From: Octopus bimaculoides
Lineage: Eukaryota
Assembly (NCBI RefSeq): GCF_001194135.2
Contig: NC_068987.1
Span: forward strand, 1,792,301-1,844,724
Direction of reading: 5' to 3'
DNA length: 52,424 nucleotides
Part shown: piece by piece, positions 2,033 through 51,929 of the stretch
Layout: every line of letters starts with the position of its first letter
Position numbering within the stretch: the first letter of the stretch is position 1
The notes under the pieces: model-generated
The model's input: only the letters and a program-made list of their open reading frames with translations
The model's database searches: none
Told to the model about the DNA's origin: nothing
Translations under genes and position numbers: made by a program

Positions 2033-2420
2033 TCTGTGGTGAGACGTGTAAGGGGATGGAGCCCTCCAGGTCTGAAAATATCTCAGACTCCCTGTTTATA
2101 ACAAACATTGCTTTTAAGTCATTAAAAAGATGAGGGAACAAAGTGATATATTTACGTTCTTGTGCATATATGTGTATATGTGCGTACCTATCTGTGTGTG
2201 TGTGTGTGTGCCAGTATGTTTGAATAGTTGTATTCGTATCAGCTGCCTCTTTCTCTGTGCGTTTCTGTGCGTGTGTGTGTATGTGTAAATATATATATGT
2301 ATGTGTGTGTCTATTATGTATGTGTATGCTCGTGTCTATCAGTGGCCGTGTTAACATGGAACTCTTTCCCATCCTGGAGTGTTAGGTCTCCCTTCACAAT
2401 TCACTTTTGATCGTCAACAG

Positions 2421-2537
2421 ATCCGTGGAATTGTGAGGACGACCACGAAGAATGTCGAGAAATCATGCGACGTGGCCGTTGTACGAAGGAGGGGGGAAAA
2501 TACTACCTCCATTGTCAACGATCGTGTGGACTTTGCG
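2421..2537 (+). CDS. Coding exon (phase 1-1) encoding a complete ShKT (ShK toxin-like) six-cysteine domain: PWNCEDDHEECREIMRRGRCTKEGGKYYLHCQRSCGLC
   Basis: Acceptor cttttgatcgtcaacAG at 2419-2420, donor G|GTAAGG at 2538. Length 117 nt, open frame. Cys spacing C-x6-C-x8-C-x10-C-x3-C-x2-C with C-x-D start and C-x-R-S-C-x-x-C end is the ShKT signature. This frame is absent from the ORF track. Confidence 0.9.
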
Positions 2538-2849
2538 GTAAGGAAACCTCATCCAATAATTCTTCATTGTGACCCGTTTTTTTTTTATAGGTGGCGGAGT
2601 GGTGCTGGTGGGGAATGCTAGCAATGGTGGACGGACATACAGACTCAGCCGTGGTCACCATCATTCTTACAGACATTCATATACACATACATACGTACAC
2701 ACACACACACACACACATATACATACACATAAACATACACACGCACATGCATATATACATACATACATTCACACACATATACACACATACATACATACAT
2801 ACATACATATATACACACATATATATATGTATGTATGTATGTATATGTG

Positions 2850-5046: not shown

Positions 5047-5161
5047 TTCATGTTGTAGATGTTCTTGTTGTTGTTCTTATGGAATTTTACTCATATTATT
5101 TTAAGTGCAAATTTCGACTTCTACTTTTATATCTCCCCACCCTGCTCTTACACAAACTCAG

Positions 5162-5447
5162 CCCCTCTCAAAGAAACTAAATGTAAAACCTCCGAAGGTT
5201 GTACGTTCGAATCTGATGGTTTGCATTCAAATGGAATCTTTCCAGGTGTCCGCGAAGAGAGTAAACAACGGTGCGAATTTGCTGACAAATATGTCGGCAA
5301 ATGGATGTTGTATGAAGAAGAATACAATGAACAGGTCGTCATTAACAAAACACACATCAGTTTCTCCAAGCTAGGATCTTTCCGATGTGAAGAATTAAAC
5401 CCATATAAGGAGAAATATAAAGTATCATCAGTGTTTCCTAATGGATG
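5162..5447 (+). CDS. Coding exon (phase 1-2): PLKETKCKTSEGCTFESDGLHSNGIFPGVREESKQRCEFADKYVGKWMLYEEEYNEQVVINKTHISFSKLGSFRCEELNPYKEKYKVSSVFPNG; the alternative in-frame start is 5246
   Basis: Donor TG|GTAAGT at 5448. Acceptor either ...ctcttacacaaactcAG (5160-5161) or atctttccAG (5244-5245). Lies in ORF 5059..5451. The split codon TG+T gives Cys with the next exon. The 3' boundary is firm and the 5' boundary is ambiguous. Confidence 0.85.
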
Positions 5448-5567
5448 GTAAGTAGGGCTCCTGGCTTTCTTTATTCCGTTTTTCCTTCTTTCAGTTATAT
5501 ATTTTTAAATTACGGAGATGTACTTGCATAGCAAGTCACCTGATATGAGATCGTGTGCTGGAACGAA

Positions 5568-7104: not shown

Positions 7105-7169
7105 TTCTCAACGCTATACTTGCATAGAATTCAATCGCAGAAACAATAACCTACTGCAGTATAGAATAG
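7105..7169 (+). CDS. Coding exon (phase 2-1): (C)SQRYTCIEFNRRNNNLLQYRI(G)
   Basis: Acceptor tttctctttttgtcatttcAG, donor G|GTGAGT at 7170. Length 65 nt, continues the frame of the previous exon without stops. Confidence 0.9.
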
Positions 7170-8487: not shown

Positions 8488-8706
8488 ACTCTTTTCTACT
8501 CTGGGCACAAGGCCCGAAATCTTTGGGGGAGGGGGCCAGTCGATTAGATCGACTCCAGTACGCAACTGGTACTTAATTTATCGACCCCGAAAGGATGAAA
8601 GGCAAAGTCAACCTCGGCGGAATTTGAACCCAGAACGTAAAGACAGACGAACTACCGCTAACCATTTCGCCCGGCGTGCTAACGTTTCTGCCAAGCTCCT
8701 CGCCGT
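8488..8706 (-). mobile_element. SINE family B
   Basis: Close reverse-complement match to 9351-9520, roughly 90% by eye. Confidence 0.88.
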
Positions 8707-9350: not shown

Positions 9351-9768
9351 ATGCGGCGAGCTGGCAGAAATGTTAGCACACCGGGCGAACTGCTTAGCAG
9401 TATTTCGTCTGCCACTGCGTTCTGAGTTCAAATTCCGCCGAGGTCGACTTTGCCTTTCATCCTTTCGGGGTCGATAAATTAAGTACCAGTTACGCACTGG
9501 GGTCGATATAATCGACTTAATCCGTTTGTCTGTTCTTGTTTGTCCCCTCTGTGTATAACCCCTTGTGGGCAGTAAAGAAATAGGTATTTCGTCTGCCACT
9601 ATGATCTGAGTTCAAATTCCGCCGAGGTCGATTTTGCCTTTCATCCTTTCGGGGGTCGATTAAATAAGTACCAGTTACGCACTGGGGTCGATATAATCGA
9701 CTTAATCCGTTTGTCTGTCCTTCTTTGTCCCCTCTGTGTGTAGCCCCTTGTGGGCAGTAAAGAAATAA
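9351..9768 (+). mobile_element. SINE family B with head-to-tail duplication of a unit of about 184 bp
   Basis: 9400-9583 is repeated at 9584-9768 (GTATTTCGTCTGCCACT...GTGGGCAGTAAAGAAATA); B-box-like GAGTTCAAATTCC in both units. Confidence 0.9.
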
Positions 9769-14902: not shown

Positions 14903-15010
14903 GTAAATTTAGACGAATGAACTTACCACTGGATCAGCTGTGTGTATTTAACGATGATACATACCCTTGGATGGAAAGTGGGTGGAGTTACCATATGAAA
15001 AATCTCATCC
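14903..15010 (+). CDS. Coding exon (phase 1-1): (G)KFRRMNLPLDQLCVFNDDTYPWMESGWSYHMKNLI(Q)
   Basis: Acceptor ttatttctcgtcgttgcAG, donor C|GTAAGT at 15011. Length 108 nt, open frame, phase-compatible on both sides. Confidence 0.88.
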
Positions 15011-17175: not shown

Positions 17176-17352
17176 AAATGGAGAATCTGTGGCCGTCGTA
17201 TTGTGGTCTGGAAAGCAGCATTCCCTTCAGTGGAACCTACGATGGACAGTACTGTGAAGGGACGATAGGAGATTGGAACGAGAATACGTGTCTTACCGAA
17301 AGCTCTCTTATTTTGAGGTCAGATACCTGTTCAGCTCTTTTGATCCCTCAAG
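17176..17352 (+). CDS. Coding exon (phase 1-1): (Q)MENLWPSYCGLESSIPFSGTYDGQYCEGTIGDWNENTCLTESSLILRSDTCSALLIPQ(E)
   Basis: Acceptor tttctttttgtttttgtttggcAG, donor G|GTAAGA at 17353. Length 177 nt, lies in ORF 17169..17363, Cys/Trp-rich. Confidence 0.9.
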
Positions 17353-17543: not shown

Positions 17544-17852
17544 TCTGAGTTCAAATTCCGCCGAGGTCGACTTTGCCTTTCATTATTTCGCGATCGATAA
17601 ATTAAGTACCAGTTGTGTACTGGGGTCGACCTAATCGACTGCCCCCCTCCCTCCCCCAAAATTTCGGGCCTTGTGCCTAGAATAGAAAAAAATATATAAA
17701 TACCCCGAAGGTGGCGATCAGGCAGAATTGGTGCCGCACCGGAAAAAATGCTGAGCGGCGTTTATCCCAACTTAACGTTCTAAGTTCAAATGCCACCGGG
17801 GTTGAGCTAAGCTTTAATCCACTTTGCTGGCCTTGTGTCAAAATTTTAAAAC
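17544..17852 (+). mobile_element. Two SINE family B copies (5'-truncated 17544-17690; internally deleted 17709-17852)
   Basis: GTTCTGAGTTCAAATTCCGCCGAGGTCGACTTTGCC...ACTGGGGTCGACCTAATCGACT; the second copy starts AAGGTGGCGATCAGGCAGAA. Confidence 0.8.
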
Positions 17853-18076: not shown

Positions 18077-18174
18077 AATTTGAGTGCCTTGCCTTCTTAA
18101 ACGAGCAAAATGGATTGATTGATAATCTGGTTATAACTCGTAGCAAAGATGGAAAAAATGAATTTAACTGTTGG
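18077..18174 (+). CDS. Coding exon (phase 1-0): (E)FECLAFLNEQNGLIDNLVITRSKDGKNEFNCW
   Basis: Acceptor ttctttattctctgtttcAG, donor TGG|GTAAGT at 18175. Length 98 nt, open frame. Confidence 0.9.
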
Positions 18175-19145: not shown

Positions 19146-21455
19146 GCTGTAACTTGTCAGCAACATGACCTGGTGGAGTGCAGTCTAAATTCGCTAATAG
19201 TGTTATGTGTCTCTTTTGCCGAGAGCAGACATTGAAAATGAGTCGACTGGATCAGAGCTGATCCAGGCTTAAACAACAAGGAAGAATGACACATTAGTTA
19301 ATGTAACACTAGATACACAATGCGTGTAGAAAAGACGGTATTTTTTCGTTTGAAAATTTCTGATCATAGGTCTACTGGATAATGTCTGTCCTGGGGCTAA
19401 ACTACAACAGCAACAACAACAACATCAGGGGCATTAGTAGCAACATCAAAGTCAATGAAAATAGCATTACAGGAACAATAATGAGATACAGCAACGTTGC
19501 GATCGGATCCCACTTACATTACCATAAGGAATGCTAGGAGGAGGAGAAGAAGGAGGCGGAAGAGAAAGAAGTAGGAGGAGGAGGAGGAGGAGGAGGAGGG
19601 GAGGAAATAAGAGATCAGGTGACAGTAGGTTAACAAGAAATATGTCGATGATATTAAGTCATTCAATTAAAGAAGCGGACGAAAATCGCGGATGTTTAAA
19701 ATGTTTGAGTAATCATATTATGGGTTGTTTGGTTGCAATAAAGATTCTGCGACTAACAAGACAACAGCTTGAATTCTAGAGTTTACAGACGACGAAGAAG
19801 AAGAAGGAGAAGAAGAAGAAGAAGANNNNNNNNNNACGTGTGTGAGTGTGTGTGTAATCCTGTGTATCATACTTTACGTAGATGTGTTCTAGACAACCTG
19901 TAAACTGCGGTATTCGTTTCGAGATAGCATCTCTTCTAAACGTATAGTGTTAAAAAACACGGAAATATATCAGTGGCAGTCAAAAAGAATTTCTAAATCC
20001 GTTTATCTGCTTCTTTGAAAGACCCAGTAGTAAGTAAACACCGAATGTTTTTCAGCTGCTTAATGCTGTTGAAACCGGACATAGCGAATGGTCCCACGGA
20101 ATTATTGTGGTAGAGGAAAAAGGAATTCTTGCAGAAAATTTCATATATTTCGATAACATATAAATAAGTGATTTTTAAGAGAAAGACGATTACTTTTGAC
20201 CAGAAACATATTGGGCGAAGGGAAAGAAATGTCCCTAACTCTTGAGAAATTGTCATGCAGAAGACAGAAGGAAGTTTCTATTTAAGATTCCTGACATCAT
20301 AATGAATCCCATGCTTGTCATTTACTTCTTGGCACATTATTCTCAGCTTTAATGTCTGCTGCTGTTGTTGCTGCTGGTGCATTCTCCCAATAAACACAAA
20401 ATCCTCCATTGTCCTACTTTTACCAGCGAACAATTATCCGCCACCCCTGTAAACCCAACAGATAAACTCGCATTCAACAGCGTGAAGTTAATGTAGTTTA
20501 TGTGCAGATTTCGGTACACACAATGCAAGCAGCTTCAACAGTATNNNNNNNNNNNNNNNNNNNNNNNNNNNNNNNNNNNNNNNNNNNNNNNNNNNNNNNN
20601 NNNNNNNNNNNNNNNNNNNNNNNNNNNNNNNNNNNNNNNNNNNNNNNNNNNNNNNNNNNNNNNNNNNNNNNNNNNNNNNNNNNNNNNNNNNNNNNNNNNN
20701 NNNNNNNNNNNNNNNNNNNNNNNNNNNNNNNNNNNNNNNNNNNNNNNNNNNNNNNNNNNNNNNNNNNNNNNNNNNNNNNNNNNNNNNNNNNNNNNNNNNN
20801 NNNNNNNNNNNNNNNNNNNNNNNNNNNNNNNNNNNNNNNNNNNNNNNNNNNNNNNNNNNNNNNNNNNNNNNNNNNNNNNNNNNNNNNNNNNNNNNNNNNN
20901 NNNNNNNNNNNNNNNNNNNNNNNNNNNNNNNNNNNNNNNNNNNNNNNNNNNNNNNNNNNNNNNNNNNNNNNNNNNNNNNNNNNNNNNNNNNNNNNNNNNN
21001 NNNNNNNNNNNNNNNNNNNNNNNNNNNNNNNNNNNNNNNNNNNNNNNNNNNNNNNNNNNNNNNNNNNNNNNNNNNNNNNNNNNATATATATATCTATTTG
21101 TGTGTGTATCTATATGTATATGTATGTATATATCTATGTTCAAAACACGAACTCGCGCATATGCAATCACATATACGCGTACGTACACATATATATATAT
21201 ATCTTAAATCAAACTTTCATATATAAGAAAAATGTTCATATACACACATATAATCGTACATATACATATTAAATATATATGACCATAAATATTTGTACAT
21301 ATTCAAACACACGCATATAGAAATTTATTTATATATGAGTACGTGTGTGTGTTTGTGTGTGTGTATCATATTTATATAATATATTTCAATATACACCTAT
21401 ACATATAATACACGCTTATAATATATATATATATATATATATATACATGATATAC

Positions 21456-32222: not shown

Positions 32223-32910
32223 TACATTCTGAGTTCAAATTCCGCCGAAGTCGACTTTGTCTTTCATCCTTTCGGGGTCGATAGATTAAGTAGCAGTTGC
32301 GTACTGGGGTCGATCTAATCGACTGGGCCTCCCCACCTCCCTAAAAATTTCGGGCCTTTTGCCAAGAGTGGAAAAGGATATTGTTCTTGTTGTTATTGCT
32401 TTTGTTATTCTCGTTGTGATGCTATTGTTGTTTTTATATTTGTTGTTATTTATTGTTACTGTGGTTGTATAAAGAAATCAAACTGGCAGAATCGTTAGTG
32501 CGCCGGATAAAATATTTTGCGGCATTTAGTCCGTCTTCACGTTCTGGGTTGAAACTCTGCCGAGGTCGATTTTGGATTTCAACCTCATGGGATCGATAAA
32601 ATGAGTACCAGTTGCACACTGGGGTCGATTCAATCGACTAGCGCCCCCCCCCCCAAAAAAAAAAATTTCACGCCTTGTACCTTTAGTAGAGAGGATTATT
32701 AACTTTTGCTGTGAAGGCGGCGTTTTGGCAGAATCGTTACGAAACCGGACAAAATGCCGAACGACATTTCTGAGTTCAAATTGCCCCTAGGTTGACTATG
32801 TCTGTCATCCTTTCAGGGTGGATAAAATAAGTACCAGTTGCGTACTGGGGTCGATATAATCGACTCCCCCTCACTTCAAGAATGCTGGTCTCGTGCCAAA
32901 ATTGGAAAGA
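32223..32910 (+). mobile_element. Cluster of three same-strand SINE family B copies (32223-32380, 32483-32698, 32714-32910)
   Basis: Each has TTCTGRGTT(C/G)AAA..., CATCCTTTC/CAACCTC, AGTACCAGTTGC..ACTGGGGTCGAT..ATCGACT. Confidence 0.85.
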
Positions 32911-42639: not shown

Positions 42640-42757
42640 CAATGCCTCAAATTTCGGGGACGGAATTAAGTCGATTACGTCGACCCCAGTGCATAACTAG
42701 TACTTATTTAATCGATCCCGAAAGGATGAAAGGCGAAGTCGACCTCGGCGGAATTTG
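42640..42757 (-). mobile_element. SINE family B, partial
   Basis: CGACCCCAGTGCATAACTAGTACTTATTTAATCGATCCCGAAAGGATGAAAGGCGAAGTCGACCTCGGCGGAATTTG. Confidence 0.85.
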
Positions 42758-44063: not shown

Positions 44064-44532
44064 ATTCCAAATTTTGCCACAAGGGCAGAAATTCTGGGGT
44101 GAGGGGATGAGTCAATTACATCGACCCCAGTACGCAACTGGTTCTTATTTTATCGACCTCGAAAGGATGAAAGGTACAGTCGACCTCGGCGGAATTTGAA
44201 CTCAGAACATAGAGACGGGCGAAATGCCGCTAAGCATTTCGTCCAGCGGGCTAACCATTCTGCCAGCTCGCCGCCTTAATAATAATAATAATGATAAAGA
44301 AATAATACGAATAATAATCCTTTCTACTAAAGGCACAAGACCTGAAATTTAGGGGAGAGGGCCAGTCGATAAGATCGACCCTTGTACGCAACTGATACTA
44401 AATTTATCAACCACGAATAGATGAAAGCCAAAGTCGACGTCAGCGGAATTTGAACTCAGAACGTAAGGACGGACGAAATGTCGCTAAGCATTTTGTCCGG
44501 CGTGCTAACGACTCTGCCAGCTCGCTGCCTTA
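44064..44532 (-). mobile_element. Two tandem SINE family B copies (44064-44279, 44318-44532) embedded in (AAT)n
   Basis: Both end on + with CTGCCAGCTCGC(C/T)GCCTTAA, the reverse complement of the element start. Confidence 0.88.
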
Positions 44533-51787: not shown

Positions 51788-51929
51788 GTAATTACATCTT
51801 CTAGGAGAATCAACTCAACTTGGTTAAACAATGATATCTATCGAATGAAAAGCGTACAGTGTTCTTCGATGCCAGATATTGAAGTTTTGTCATCGAGAAA
51901 GCCAAAAGCTTCTCTCTATTTACAAGACA
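51788..51929 (+). CDS. Probable next coding exon (phase 0-1): VITSSRRINSTWLNNDIYRMKSVQCSSMPDIEVLSSRKPKASLYLQD
   Basis: Acceptor tttttctacaatttctctcttaaccAG, donor A|GTGAGT at 51930. Length 142 nt, open frame, phase 0 matches the 18174 donor. It is the best phase-0 candidate I found downstream of 18174 but implies a 33.6-kb intron. Confidence 0.65.

What the first reader, a model, noticed from the sequence alone, without database searches (positions are those of the whole stretch)
2421..2537. ShKT domain with a Lys-Tyr dyad placed as in the sea-anemone Kv blocker BgK
Seen: the exon encodes CEDDHEEC-REIMRRGR-C-TKEGGKYYLH-C-QRS-C-GL-C. Established: ShK and BgK block Kv1 channels through a Lys-Tyr dyad between Cys3 and Cys4 (BgK ...KYRANC, ShK ...KYRLSFC), and the fold is stabilised by an Asp two residues after Cys1 paired with a basic residue two after Cys4. 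Here the Lys sits five residues before Cys4 as in BgK, and both Asp and the basic residue (Arg) are kept. Most ShKT domains in multidomain proteins lack the dyad. Inference: this may be a tethered or cleavable K+ channel modulator in a cephalopod-like animal.
Basis: partly seen in the sequence, partly recalled or inferred. Interest (0 to 1): 0.85.

Follow-up and report, generated by a model that had tools for sequence, protein, structure and literature searches.

The report
Optional ShKT exon in octopus surface protein
The exon really encodes a ShK-toxin-like domain with a Lys-Tyr pair placed as in BgK, but it is a conserved, optionally spliced internal module of a large uncharacterised mollusc surface protein, and nothing here shows it blocks K+ channels.

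Summary
Window 2421-2537 (+) is a 117-bp exon with AG/GT splice sites, in phase 1 at both ends. It encodes PWNCEDDHEECREIMRRGRCTKEGGKYYLHCQRSCGLC and scores 29 bits against Pfam ShK (cut-off 20.9).

It is exon 1 of 7 in the window. The gene is octopus 'uncharacterized protein LOC115213946 / LOC106872790', already in RefSeq; UniProt labels the O. vulgaris copy 'ShKT domain-containing protein'.

The protein has 632-776 aa in the annotated models that include the exon. It has a signal peptide, all-beta DUF7042/7043/7044 domains and a hydrophobic C-terminal tail that looks like a GPI-anchor signal. The ShKT domain sits in the middle with no flanking dibasic cleavage sites.

Orthologues in chiton, gastropods, bivalves and a nemertean carry a ShKT domain at the same place. 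In chiton it is the same 117-bp exon.

Annotated isoforms skip the exon, so it appears to be a cassette exon.

The Lys is kept in cephalopods, chiton and three other lineages. It is replaced in 12 of 20 orthologues and is Arg in one. The following aromatic residue is nearly constant. Net charge is 0, against +5 to +7 for BgK and ShK.

Structure modelling of the domain failed (pLDDT 44-57).

Verdict: a real, ordinary ShKT module in a new architecture. The channel-modulator idea is untested and unlikely.

The parts
2421..2537 (+). ShKT-domain exon (117 bp, phase 1 at both ends). It encodes (D)PWNCEDDHEECREIMRRGRCTKEGGKYYLHCQRSCGLC(G). Annotated isoforms skip it, so it is a cassette exon.
   Evidence: Pfam ShK 29 bits. 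Identical in P0002, P0045, P0049 and P0053. Absent from P0048, P0046, P0060 and P0001.
2419..2420 (+). Splice acceptor AG of the ShKT exon
2538..2543 (+). Splice donor GTAAGG of the ShKT exon
2498..2503 (+). Codons AAA TAC for Lys26-Tyr27, the 'dyad', at positions -5 and -4 from Cys4
   Evidence: These columns align to BgK K25-Y26.
5246..5447 (+). Next exon, (G)VREESKQRCEFADKYVGKW...SSVFPNG(C), the start of the DUF7043 domain. The acceptor is ttccAG|GT.
   Evidence: Pfam DUF7043.
7105..7169 (+). Exon (C)SQRYTCIEFNRRNNNLLQYRI(G), continuing DUF7043
14903..15010 (+). Exon (G)KFRRMNLPLDQLCVFNDDTYPWMESGWSYHMKNLI(Q)
17176..17352 (+). Exon (Q)MENLWPSYCGLESSIPFSGTYDG...LLIPQ(E), in the DUF7042 region
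18077..18174 (+). Exon (E)FECLAFLNEQNGLIDNLVITRSKDGKNEFNCW
51788..51929 (+). Exon VITSSRRINSTWLNNDIYRMKSVQCSSMPDIEVLSSRKPKASLYLQD(N), reached after a 33.6-kb intron. The last coding exon or exons lie beyond the window.

Best explanation
The interval is a genuine coding exon of a very large octopus gene, about 792 kb in O. sinensis. The gene encodes an uncharacterised extracellular protein that is probably GPI-anchored.

The architecture is: signal peptide, Cys-containing all-beta domains, one ShKT domain, DUF7043/7044, DUF7042, a Ser/Thr/Pro-rich stalk, and a C-terminal hydrophobic tail.

The ShKT domain is an ancient single-exon module. It is in phase 1 at both ends, is 117 bp in both octopus and chiton, and is present at the same place in orthologues from molluscs and a nemertean.

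Because the exon is phase-symmetric it can be skipped without breaking the frame. Annotated isoforms in two octopus species do skip it.

Most likely mechanism (inferred): the domain is a small disulfide-locked interaction or spacer module. It stays covalently embedded between two beta domains on the cell surface. Splicing decides whether the protein carries it.

The Lys-Tyr pair is best read as a conserved structural or family aromatic residue preceded by a position that varies between lineages and happens to be Lys in cephalopods. It is not a signature of a K+ channel toxin.

Shown here: the exon, the gene, the domain, conservation, the splice-compatible phase, isoforms in annotation, and variability of the Lys.

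Inferred: the GPI anchor, regulated alternative splicing, and the interaction-module role.
For: Exon, frame and splice sites.

Pfam ShK above cut-off: and within the full protein.

Gene identity and isoforms with and without the exon.

Seven phase-compatible exons, giving 303 codons identical to the annotated proteins.

Transcript contig containing the exon in a related cephalopod.

Purifying selection, with dN 0.044 in the exon against 0.068 elsewhere and saturated dS.

ShKT at the same position in 20 orthologues.

The same 117-bp phase 1-1 exon in the chiton genome.

Column statistics:
- Asp 20/20
- aromatic 17/20
- His 19/20
- K/R at Cys3+2 18/20
- 'dyad' Lys only 7/20
- net charge 0

No dibasic site flanks the domain, and the protein ends in a hydrophobic tail. 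The model shows helix 739-757 at the extreme C-terminus and beta-rich domains at pLDDT 85-93.
Against: Lys at -5 is commoner than background, at 35% of sequences against 11.7% Lys overall. It is found in chiton, cephalopods, a protobranch, a scallop and a sea slug, and Mytilus has Arg. It may therefore be ancestral in molluscs and could have a role.

The family profile aligns best to ShKT domains that do block Kv1.3 weakly, namely BmK1, AcK1/Acan1, BgK and MMP23.

No RNA-seq junction counts were examined, so exon skipping rests on annotated isoforms only.

The ShKT part of the model was low-confidence (pLDDT 44-50), so its packing and the exposure of K-Y are unknown.

GPI anchoring is judged from sequence features only.
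Confidence: 0.62

Rival explanations
1. Tethered K+ channel modulator. The membrane-anchored protein presents its ShKT domain to the outer vestibule of a Kv channel in cis or in trans, with Lys26 entering the pore and Tyr27 alongside. This would resemble the MMP23 toxin domain, or the GPI-anchored Ly6 'prototoxins'. Splicing would switch the activity on or off.
For: The K-Y pair sits on the BgK dyad columns. Asp and the basic residue are present. The closest solved relatives include weak Kv1.3 blockers: BmK1, AcK1/Acan1 and MMP23. Acan1 has an IC50 of 829 nM (PMC8239465), and the MMP-23 ShKT domain blocks Kv1.3 (PMC10496531). K-Y is kept across deep cephalopod divergence and in chiton. The protein is probably surface-anchored.
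Against: The Lys is replaced by G, V, I, N, A or E in 12 of 20 orthologues, while the domain and the whole protein stay conserved. Net charge is 0, against +5 for BgK and +7 for ShK, and the Cys1-Cys2 segment EDDHEE is acidic. Gly replaces the Ser two residues before the Lys, which is a binding hot-spot in BgK and ShK (my recollection of Dauplais et al. 1997 and Pennington et al. 1996). A dyad alone does not predict block: an Oulactis ShKT peptide with a dyad is inactive (PMC6409789).
Confidence: 0.1
2. Released venom or secretory peptide. The domain would be excised from the precursor and act as a free ShK-like toxin, for example in posterior salivary gland secretion.
For: Octopods are venomous, and ShKT-containing proteins occur in mollusc secretory glands (PMC6409789). 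A polybasic RRRRKKR site exists about 100 residues upstream in the cephalopod protein.
Against: No dibasic or furin site borders the domain on either side. The domain lies between two well-folded beta domains in a 632-776 aa protein conserved in non-venomous chitons, bivalves and grazing snails. The gene has a housekeeping-like, deeply conserved exon structure. It shows no tandem toxin-gene expansion; the window holds only one ShKT-like exon.
Confidence: 0.02
3. Redox-sensitive or purely structural disulfide module with no binding partner, comparable to the roles proposed for some nematode ShKT-only proteins.
For: C. elegans MUL-1-type ShKT proteins are reported to buffer oxidative stress (PMC13273113). 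Most of the more than 20,000 ShKT domains occur in enzymes and matrix proteins with no link to channels (PMC10496531). In this family the invariant residues are the six Cys, the Asp and a His.
Against: A purely passive spacer would not need 92-97% identity across cephalopods, conserved surface charges (K/R at Cys3+2 in 18/20) or a regulated cassette exon. No redox evidence exists for this protein.
Confidence: 0.2
4. Not a functional exon: a chance ORF or an annotation artefact.
For: The oldest gene model of this locus (P0001) omits it. The word-index protein search found nothing with the peptide.
Against: Pfam score above cut-off. The exon is present in a spliced transcript contig. dN/dS is far below 1. 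The orthologous exon has identical boundaries in chiton.
Confidence: 0.01

Closest known systems
BgK and ShK (sea anemone type 1 K+ channel toxins, ShKT fold; PDB 1BGK, 1ROO)
   Same: Six-Cys ShKT pattern. Asp at Cys1+2 and a basic residue at Cys4+2. Lys-Tyr at -5/-4 from Cys4, exactly as BgK K25-Y26; the family profile aligns to BgK without gaps from Cys2 to Cys6, E 0.021.
   Different: This is not a free 35-37 aa secreted peptide. It is an internal domain of a 632-776 aa protein with no flanking cleavage sites. Net charge is 0, against +5 and +7. Gly replaces the hot-spot Ser two residues before the Lys. Relative to ShK the pair is shifted by one position. The Lys is not conserved among orthologues. 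Activity is unknown.
ShKT domains of helminth proteins (BmK1 from a Brugia astacin, PDB 2MCR; AcK1 and Acan1, PDB 2MD0 and 6DRI)
   Same: These are the best sequence matches among solved structures (E 0.0014-0.003). BmK1 is also a domain of a larger protein and has K-Y. They are weak (nM-uM) Kv1.3 blockers (PMC8239465).
   Different: Those domains are C-terminal appendages of secreted parasite proteins. This one is internal, in a conserved host-cell surface protein, and is optional through splicing.
MMP23 toxin domain (ShKT domain of a membrane-anchored metalloprotease; PDB 2K72)
   Same: A ShKT domain that stays part of a membrane-tethered multidomain protein. It is the precedent for a tethered domain modulating Kv1 channels (PMC10496531). 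It is matched by the family profile at E 0.025.
   Different: MMP23 lacks the K-Y dyad, with Arg and Leu instead (PMC6409789). Its partner domains (protease, Ig-CAM) are unrelated. The present protein has no recognisable catalytic domain.
Molluscan multidomain ShKT proteins (CAP-ShKT, astacin M12-ShKT; Gerdol et al. 2019, PMC6409789)
   Same: Mollusc proteins in which ShKT domains are modules of larger secreted proteins. The dyad is usually absent.
   Different: The architecture differs: here a single internal ShKT lies between DUF704x beta domains, with an anchor-like tail. Those proteins carry 1-9 C-terminal ShKT repeats on an enzyme or CAP domain.
DUF7042/DUF7043/DUF7044/DUF7045 proteins (Pfam PF23069-PF23073)
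   Same: The host protein is a member: DUF7043 scores 65 bits and DUF7044 27.9 bits in P0002, and DUF7042 is above cut-off in P0001 and in the chiton orthologue P0006.
   Different: Nothing is known about the function of these domains, and no paper in the searchable library mentions them. The model has no significant structural neighbour in the PDB.

Membership tests
ShKT domain (Pfam PF01549 ShK) | HMM score at or above the curated gathering threshold | tested here: met
   29 bits against 20.9 for the exon peptide. 22.6 bits within full-length P0002.
ShKT domain (Pfam PF01549 ShK) | Six cysteines with C-x(n)-C-x(n)-C-x(n)-C-x3-C-x2-C spacing | tested here: met
   C4, C11, C20, C31, C35, C38. 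All six are invariant in 20 orthologues.
ShKT domain (Pfam PF01549 ShK) | Asp at Cys1+2 and basic residue at Cys4+2 (the ShK D5-K30 pair) | tested here: met
   D6 and R33. Asp is 20/20 and K/R is 16/20 among orthologues.
ShKT domain (Pfam PF01549 ShK) | ShK three-dimensional fold and I-VI, II-IV, III-V disulfides | tested here: inconclusive
   The single-sequence AF2 model had pLDDT 57. The ShKT part of the full-length model had pLDDT 44-50. Foldseek on the small model returned nothing meaningful.
Sea anemone type 1 K+ channel toxins (ShK/BgK) | Lys-aromatic functional dyad in the Cys3-Cys4 helix | tested here: met
   K26-Y27. These columns align to BgK K25-Y26.
Sea anemone type 1 K+ channel toxins (ShK/BgK) | Short secreted peptide released from a small precursor | tested here: not met
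   The domain is internal to 632-776 aa proteins, with flanks QQSD...CGVREE and no dibasic sites.
Sea anemone type 1 K+ channel toxins (ShK/BgK) | Strongly basic binding surface | tested here: not met
   Net charge is 0, against +7 for ShK and +5 for BgK. The toxin sequences were taken from memory.
Sea anemone type 1 K+ channel toxins (ShK/BgK) | Block of Kv1/KCa3.1 currents | not testable with these tools
   Needs electrophysiology.
DUF7043-family surface proteins (host gene) | Pfam DUF7043, DUF7044 and DUF7042 above cut-off | tested here: met
   DUF7043 scores 33 bits from the window exons alone and 65 bits in P0002. DUF7044 scores 27.9 bits. DUF7042 scores 27.6 to 40 bits in P0001 and P0006.
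GPI-anchored proteins | N-terminal signal peptide plus a C-terminal hydrophobic tail with no cytoplasmic extension, preceded by small residues | tested here: inconclusive
   The sequence starts MCTPSYLFLVLFIAF... and ends ...GHASISISSISILMSICWTAVLLLFSLS. The model shows helix 739-757 at the very end. The tail is conserved in chiton and oyster. No dedicated predictor or experiment was available.
Alternatively spliced cassette exon | Phase-symmetric exon, and isoforms with and without it | tested here: met
   The exon is phase 1-1. It is present in O. sinensis isoforms X1-X3 and skipped in X4. It is present in O. vulgaris CAI9725180 and skipped in CAI9725182.
Alternatively spliced cassette exon | Splice-junction reads for both forms | not tested
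   No RNA-seq read data were available. One transcript contig supports inclusion.

The most novel reading that the evidence does not exclude
A lophotrochozoan, probably GPI-anchored surface protein uses an alternatively spliced ShKT exon as a switchable, membrane-tethered pore blocker or gating modifier of endogenous Kv channels. It would be an endogenous 'prototoxin', analogous to MMP23-TxD or the Ly6 proteins lynx1 and Sleepless. The K-Y dyad would be ancestral in molluscs and retained in cephalopods.
Probability: 0.07. Interest if true: 0.75.

Novelty: new member of a known kind. Interest (0 to 1): 0.3.

Why it matters
As it stands, the finding adds one more ShKT domain to the more than 20,000 already known. 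Public annotation already records it: RefSeq models include it, and UniProt names the O. vulgaris protein 'ShKT domain-containing protein'.

Four things here go a little beyond that.
- The domain sits inside an uncharacterised protein family (DUF7042-7045) found in molluscs and a nemertean, with no literature and no structural neighbour in the PDB.
- It is an ancient single-exon module with identical boundaries in chiton and octopus.
- It appears to be a cassette exon.
- A BgK-like Lys-aromatic pair may be ancestral in molluscs.

If the tethered domain did modulate K+ channels, it would be a second example, independent of MMP23, of an endogenous ShKT 'prototoxin', and it would be switchable by splicing. 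That would interest channel and cephalopod neurobiologists. The present evidence makes it a long shot.

Tried and rejected
1. My first splice model joined the ShKT exon to an acceptor at 5160-5161, starting the next exon at 5162 and adding APLKETKCK...GIFP. It is phase-compatible, but all annotated proteins and the transcript contig use the acceptor at 5244-5245, with the exon starting at 5246. I rejected my model.

2. Word-index homology searches with the 40-aa peptide and with my mis-spliced 134-aa protein found nothing. The exhaustive HMMER search with the contiguous translation 5161-5448 found the gene.

4. The single-sequence AF2 model of the domain had pLDDT 57 and not the ShK topology. 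Foldseek on it was meaningless.

5. The full-length model built with 18 sequences gave good beta domains but only pLDDT 44-50 for the ShKT. Foldseek against the PDB gave no hit at E<=0.001, only faint lipocalin-like similarity.

6. Pfam scans of the remaining complex ORFs found nothing else on the + strand (ORFs of 30 aa or more) or on the - strand (ORFs of 45 aa or more). About four of the pasted + strand pseudo-protein chunks were left out, and shorter or lower-complexity ORFs were not scanned. Rfam and tRNA scans were empty.

7. Literature searches for DUF7042-45, the locus and accession names, and the SRA run found nothing. The MMP23 primary paper was not held.

8. Fetching the O. sinensis or O. 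vulgaris locus, to compare intron conservation around the cassette exon, failed. The gene range is about 792 kb, and the other isoforms are not on record.

Full report
**Observation**

Frame 3 of the stated interval (2423-2537, + strand) reads PWNCEDDHEECREIMRRGRCTKEGGKYYLHCQRSCGLC. The other frame of that strand that I translated and the reverse strand give nothing comparable.

The interval is bounded by cAG| at 2419-2420 and |GTAAGG at 2538-2543. The exon is 117 bp and in phase 1 at both ends.

Pfam ShK (PF01549) matches end to end at 29 bits, against a cut-off of 20.9, with E 1.6e-6. A loose six-Cys regular expression also matches two TG-microsatellite ORFs. The HMM score therefore carries the weight, not the Cys pattern.

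The window is a draft animal assembly with nine N gaps and many microsatellites.

**The gene**

The word-index searches failed. An exhaustive HMMER search with the next downstream ORF then returned two near-identical proteins. Cluster look-up names them:
- Octopus sinensis 'uncharacterized protein LOC115213946', isoforms X1-X4
- O. bimaculoides LOC106872790
- two O. vulgaris models, one of which UniProt calls 'ShKT domain-containing protein'
- Argonauta hians fragments

tblastn and exact peptide look-up place seven exons of this gene in the window: 2421-2537, 5246-5447, 7105-7169, 14903-15010, 17176-17352, 18077-18174 and 51788-51929. All have canonical splice sites and compatible phases. Together they give 303 codons matching the annotated proteins.

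The upstream exons and the last exon lie outside the window. In O. sinensis the gene spans about 792 kb.

An older 406-aa model (P0001) matches this locus, including an odd terminal exon at 19371-19537. This suggests the window is O. bimaculoides, and that model skips the ShKT exon.

No other Pfam domain was found among the complex ORFs scanned on either strand, though the + strand scan omitted part of the prepared set. No Rfam family or tRNA was found.

**The protein**

Isoform X1 has 776 aa. Its parts, in order, are:
- a hydrophobic N-terminal signal sequence
- Cys-containing beta-rich regions
- a cephalopod-only disordered insert containing RRRRKKR
- a further beta domain
- the ShKT domain (residues 390-424)
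- DUF7043/7044 and DUF7042
- a Ser/Thr/Pro-rich segment
- a roughly 20-residue hydrophobic tail that ends the protein

A full-length AlphaFold model built with 18 homologues has mean pLDDT 68. The beta domains reach 85-93, and there is a terminal helix at 739-757. The ShKT stretch reaches only 44-50.

Foldseek against the PDB gives no hit at E<=0.001, only faint resemblance to small lipocalin-like barrels.

A profile of the family against PDB sequences matches only through the ShKT region.

I read the termini as a secreted, probably GPI-anchored glycoprotein. This is inference from sequence features.

**Conservation**

Orthologues were recovered from a chiton, an abalone, several caenogastropods and heterobranchs, four bivalve lineages and the nemertean Tubulanus. 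Every one of the 20 sequences examined has a single ShKT domain at the same place.

In the chiton genome the domain is again a separate 117-bp exon in phase 1 at both ends, with the same boundaries. The neighbouring exon boundaries are conserved too.

A 2964-nt transcript contig from run SRR29271460, of an unknown cephalopod, encodes a protein 80% identical. It carries the domain within a continuous 775-aa ORF. This is mRNA-level evidence for inclusion of the exon.

Against that transcript the ShKT exon has 36/39 identical residues and dN 0.044, with saturated synonymous sites. The remaining six exons have dN 0.068.

**Alternative splicing**

O. sinensis X4, two O. vulgaris models and P0001 read ...YELKAQQS-G-VREESK..., which is the exact phase-preserving skip of this exon. 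X1-X3, O. bimaculoides XP_014775386 and O. vulgaris CAI9725180 include it.

I could not inspect reads. 'Cassette exon' therefore rests on the annotation plus the phase symmetry.

**The dyad**

Lys26 is 5 residues before Cys4, as in BgK, and 6 residues after Cys3. In ShK the Lys is at +5/-6 and in BgK at +5/-5.

A profile of the 20 orthologous domains aligns to BgK without gaps from Cys2 to Cys6. It puts the family's -5/-4 columns on BgK K25-Y26 (E 0.021). It aligns the same columns to the K-Y of BmK1 and the K-L of AcK1/Acan1.

Column statistics show which residues are actually conserved:
- Asp at Cys1+2: 20/20
- acidic residue at Cys1+3: 20/20
- K/R at Cys3+2: 18/20
- aromatic residue at -4: 17/20
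- His at -1: 19/20
- K/R at Cys4+2: 16/20
- position -5: Lys in 7/20 (three cephalopod sequences, chiton, scallop, Solemya, Plakobranchus), Arg in Mytilus, and G, V, I, N, A or E in the other 12

Lys makes up 11.7% of non-Cys residues in these domains. A Lys before the conserved aromatic is therefore enriched but clearly dispensable for whatever the family does.

The octopus domain has net charge 0 and an acidic Cys1-Cys2 segment, against +7 for ShK and +5 for BgK (toxin sequences from memory). It has Gly where BgK Ser23 and ShK Ser20, both binding hot-spots, lie (my recollection of the primary literature).

The literature also shows that the dyad is a poor predictor.
- An Oulactis ShKT peptide with the dyad is inactive, and MMP23 without the dyad is active (PMC6409789).
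- Acan1, which has K-L, blocks Kv1.3 only at 829 nM (PMC8239465).

**Processing**

Nothing resembling a dibasic or furin site borders the domain. The only polybasic site is about 100 residues upstream, in a disordered cephalopod-specific insert. The domain is therefore expected to remain part of the anchored ectodomain.

**Conclusion**

The inference of K+ channel modulation is not supported by the context.

The domain is an old, conserved, optionally spliced module of a surface protein shared with non-venomous molluscs. The critical Lys is not conserved, and the electrostatics are unlike the toxins.

The channel hypothesis is not excluded. MMP23 is a precedent (PMC10496531), and I give it about 0.1.

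The exposure of the dyad could not be assessed because modelling of the domain failed.

The exon and its ShKT label are already in public annotation. The family itself is entirely uncharacterised.

Noticed in passing
Outside the window; P0045 (O. sinensis isoform X1) residues ~271-277: A polybasic RRRRKKR motif, a furin-type site. It lies in a disordered insert (pLDDT ~30) that only the cephalopod proteins have, about 100 residues upstream of the ShKT domain. Cleavage there would split the ectodomain into a free N-terminal part and an anchored part carrying the ShKT.
   Followed up: partly
Outside the window; P0045 residues ~313-330: A second optional 18-aa segment, DILKVNDLQESGLPASDE. It is present in isoforms X1, X2 and X4 and absent in X3, in P0060 and in the transcript contig. 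The gene therefore seems to have two cassette exons in its middle region.
   Followed up: no
window 19371-19537 (+): An in-frame alternative terminal exon, VYWIMSVLGLNYNSNNNN...HKEC*, used only by the old 406-aa model P0001. It has a tAG acceptor and a TAG stop. It is probably a prediction artefact forced by the 33.6-kb gapped intron. If real, it would give a form lacking the stalk and anchor.
   Followed up: partly
window 8555-8574, 9481-9500, 9666-9685, 17604-17623, 32288-32307, 32603-32622, 32829-32848, 42686-42705, 44127-44146: A dispersed SINE-like repeat on both strands, with at least 9 copies against 0.1 expected. Its translation reads ...STPVRNWYLIYRPRKDERQS.PRRNLN... A copy was mistakenly incorporated as the N-terminus of the old gene model P0001.
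   Followed up: partly
window 18175-51787: A 33.6-kb intron with several assembly gaps and dense microsatellites. The whole gene spans about 792 kb in O. sinensis for a coding sequence of about 2.3 kb.
   Followed up: no
window 5162-5245 (+): The reading frame of the DUF7043 exon stays open for 28 codons upstream of the annotated acceptor, back to another phase-compatible AG at 5160-5161. No annotated protein or transcript uses it.
   Followed up: yes
Host protein (model of P0002), beta domains ~30-160, 294-366, 420-510, 524-626: The DUF7042/7043/7044 regions are confidently modelled all-beta domains (pLDDT 85-93). They have no significant structural neighbour in the PDB, only faint lipocalin-like similarity. 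Several begin with a C-x-F-P or G-x-W type motif.
   Followed up: partly
ShKT domain columns in alignment A3: A His immediately before Cys4 (19/20) and a K/R two residues after Cys3 (18/20) are more conserved in this family than the 'dyad' Lys. They may mark the functionally important surface.
   Followed up: no
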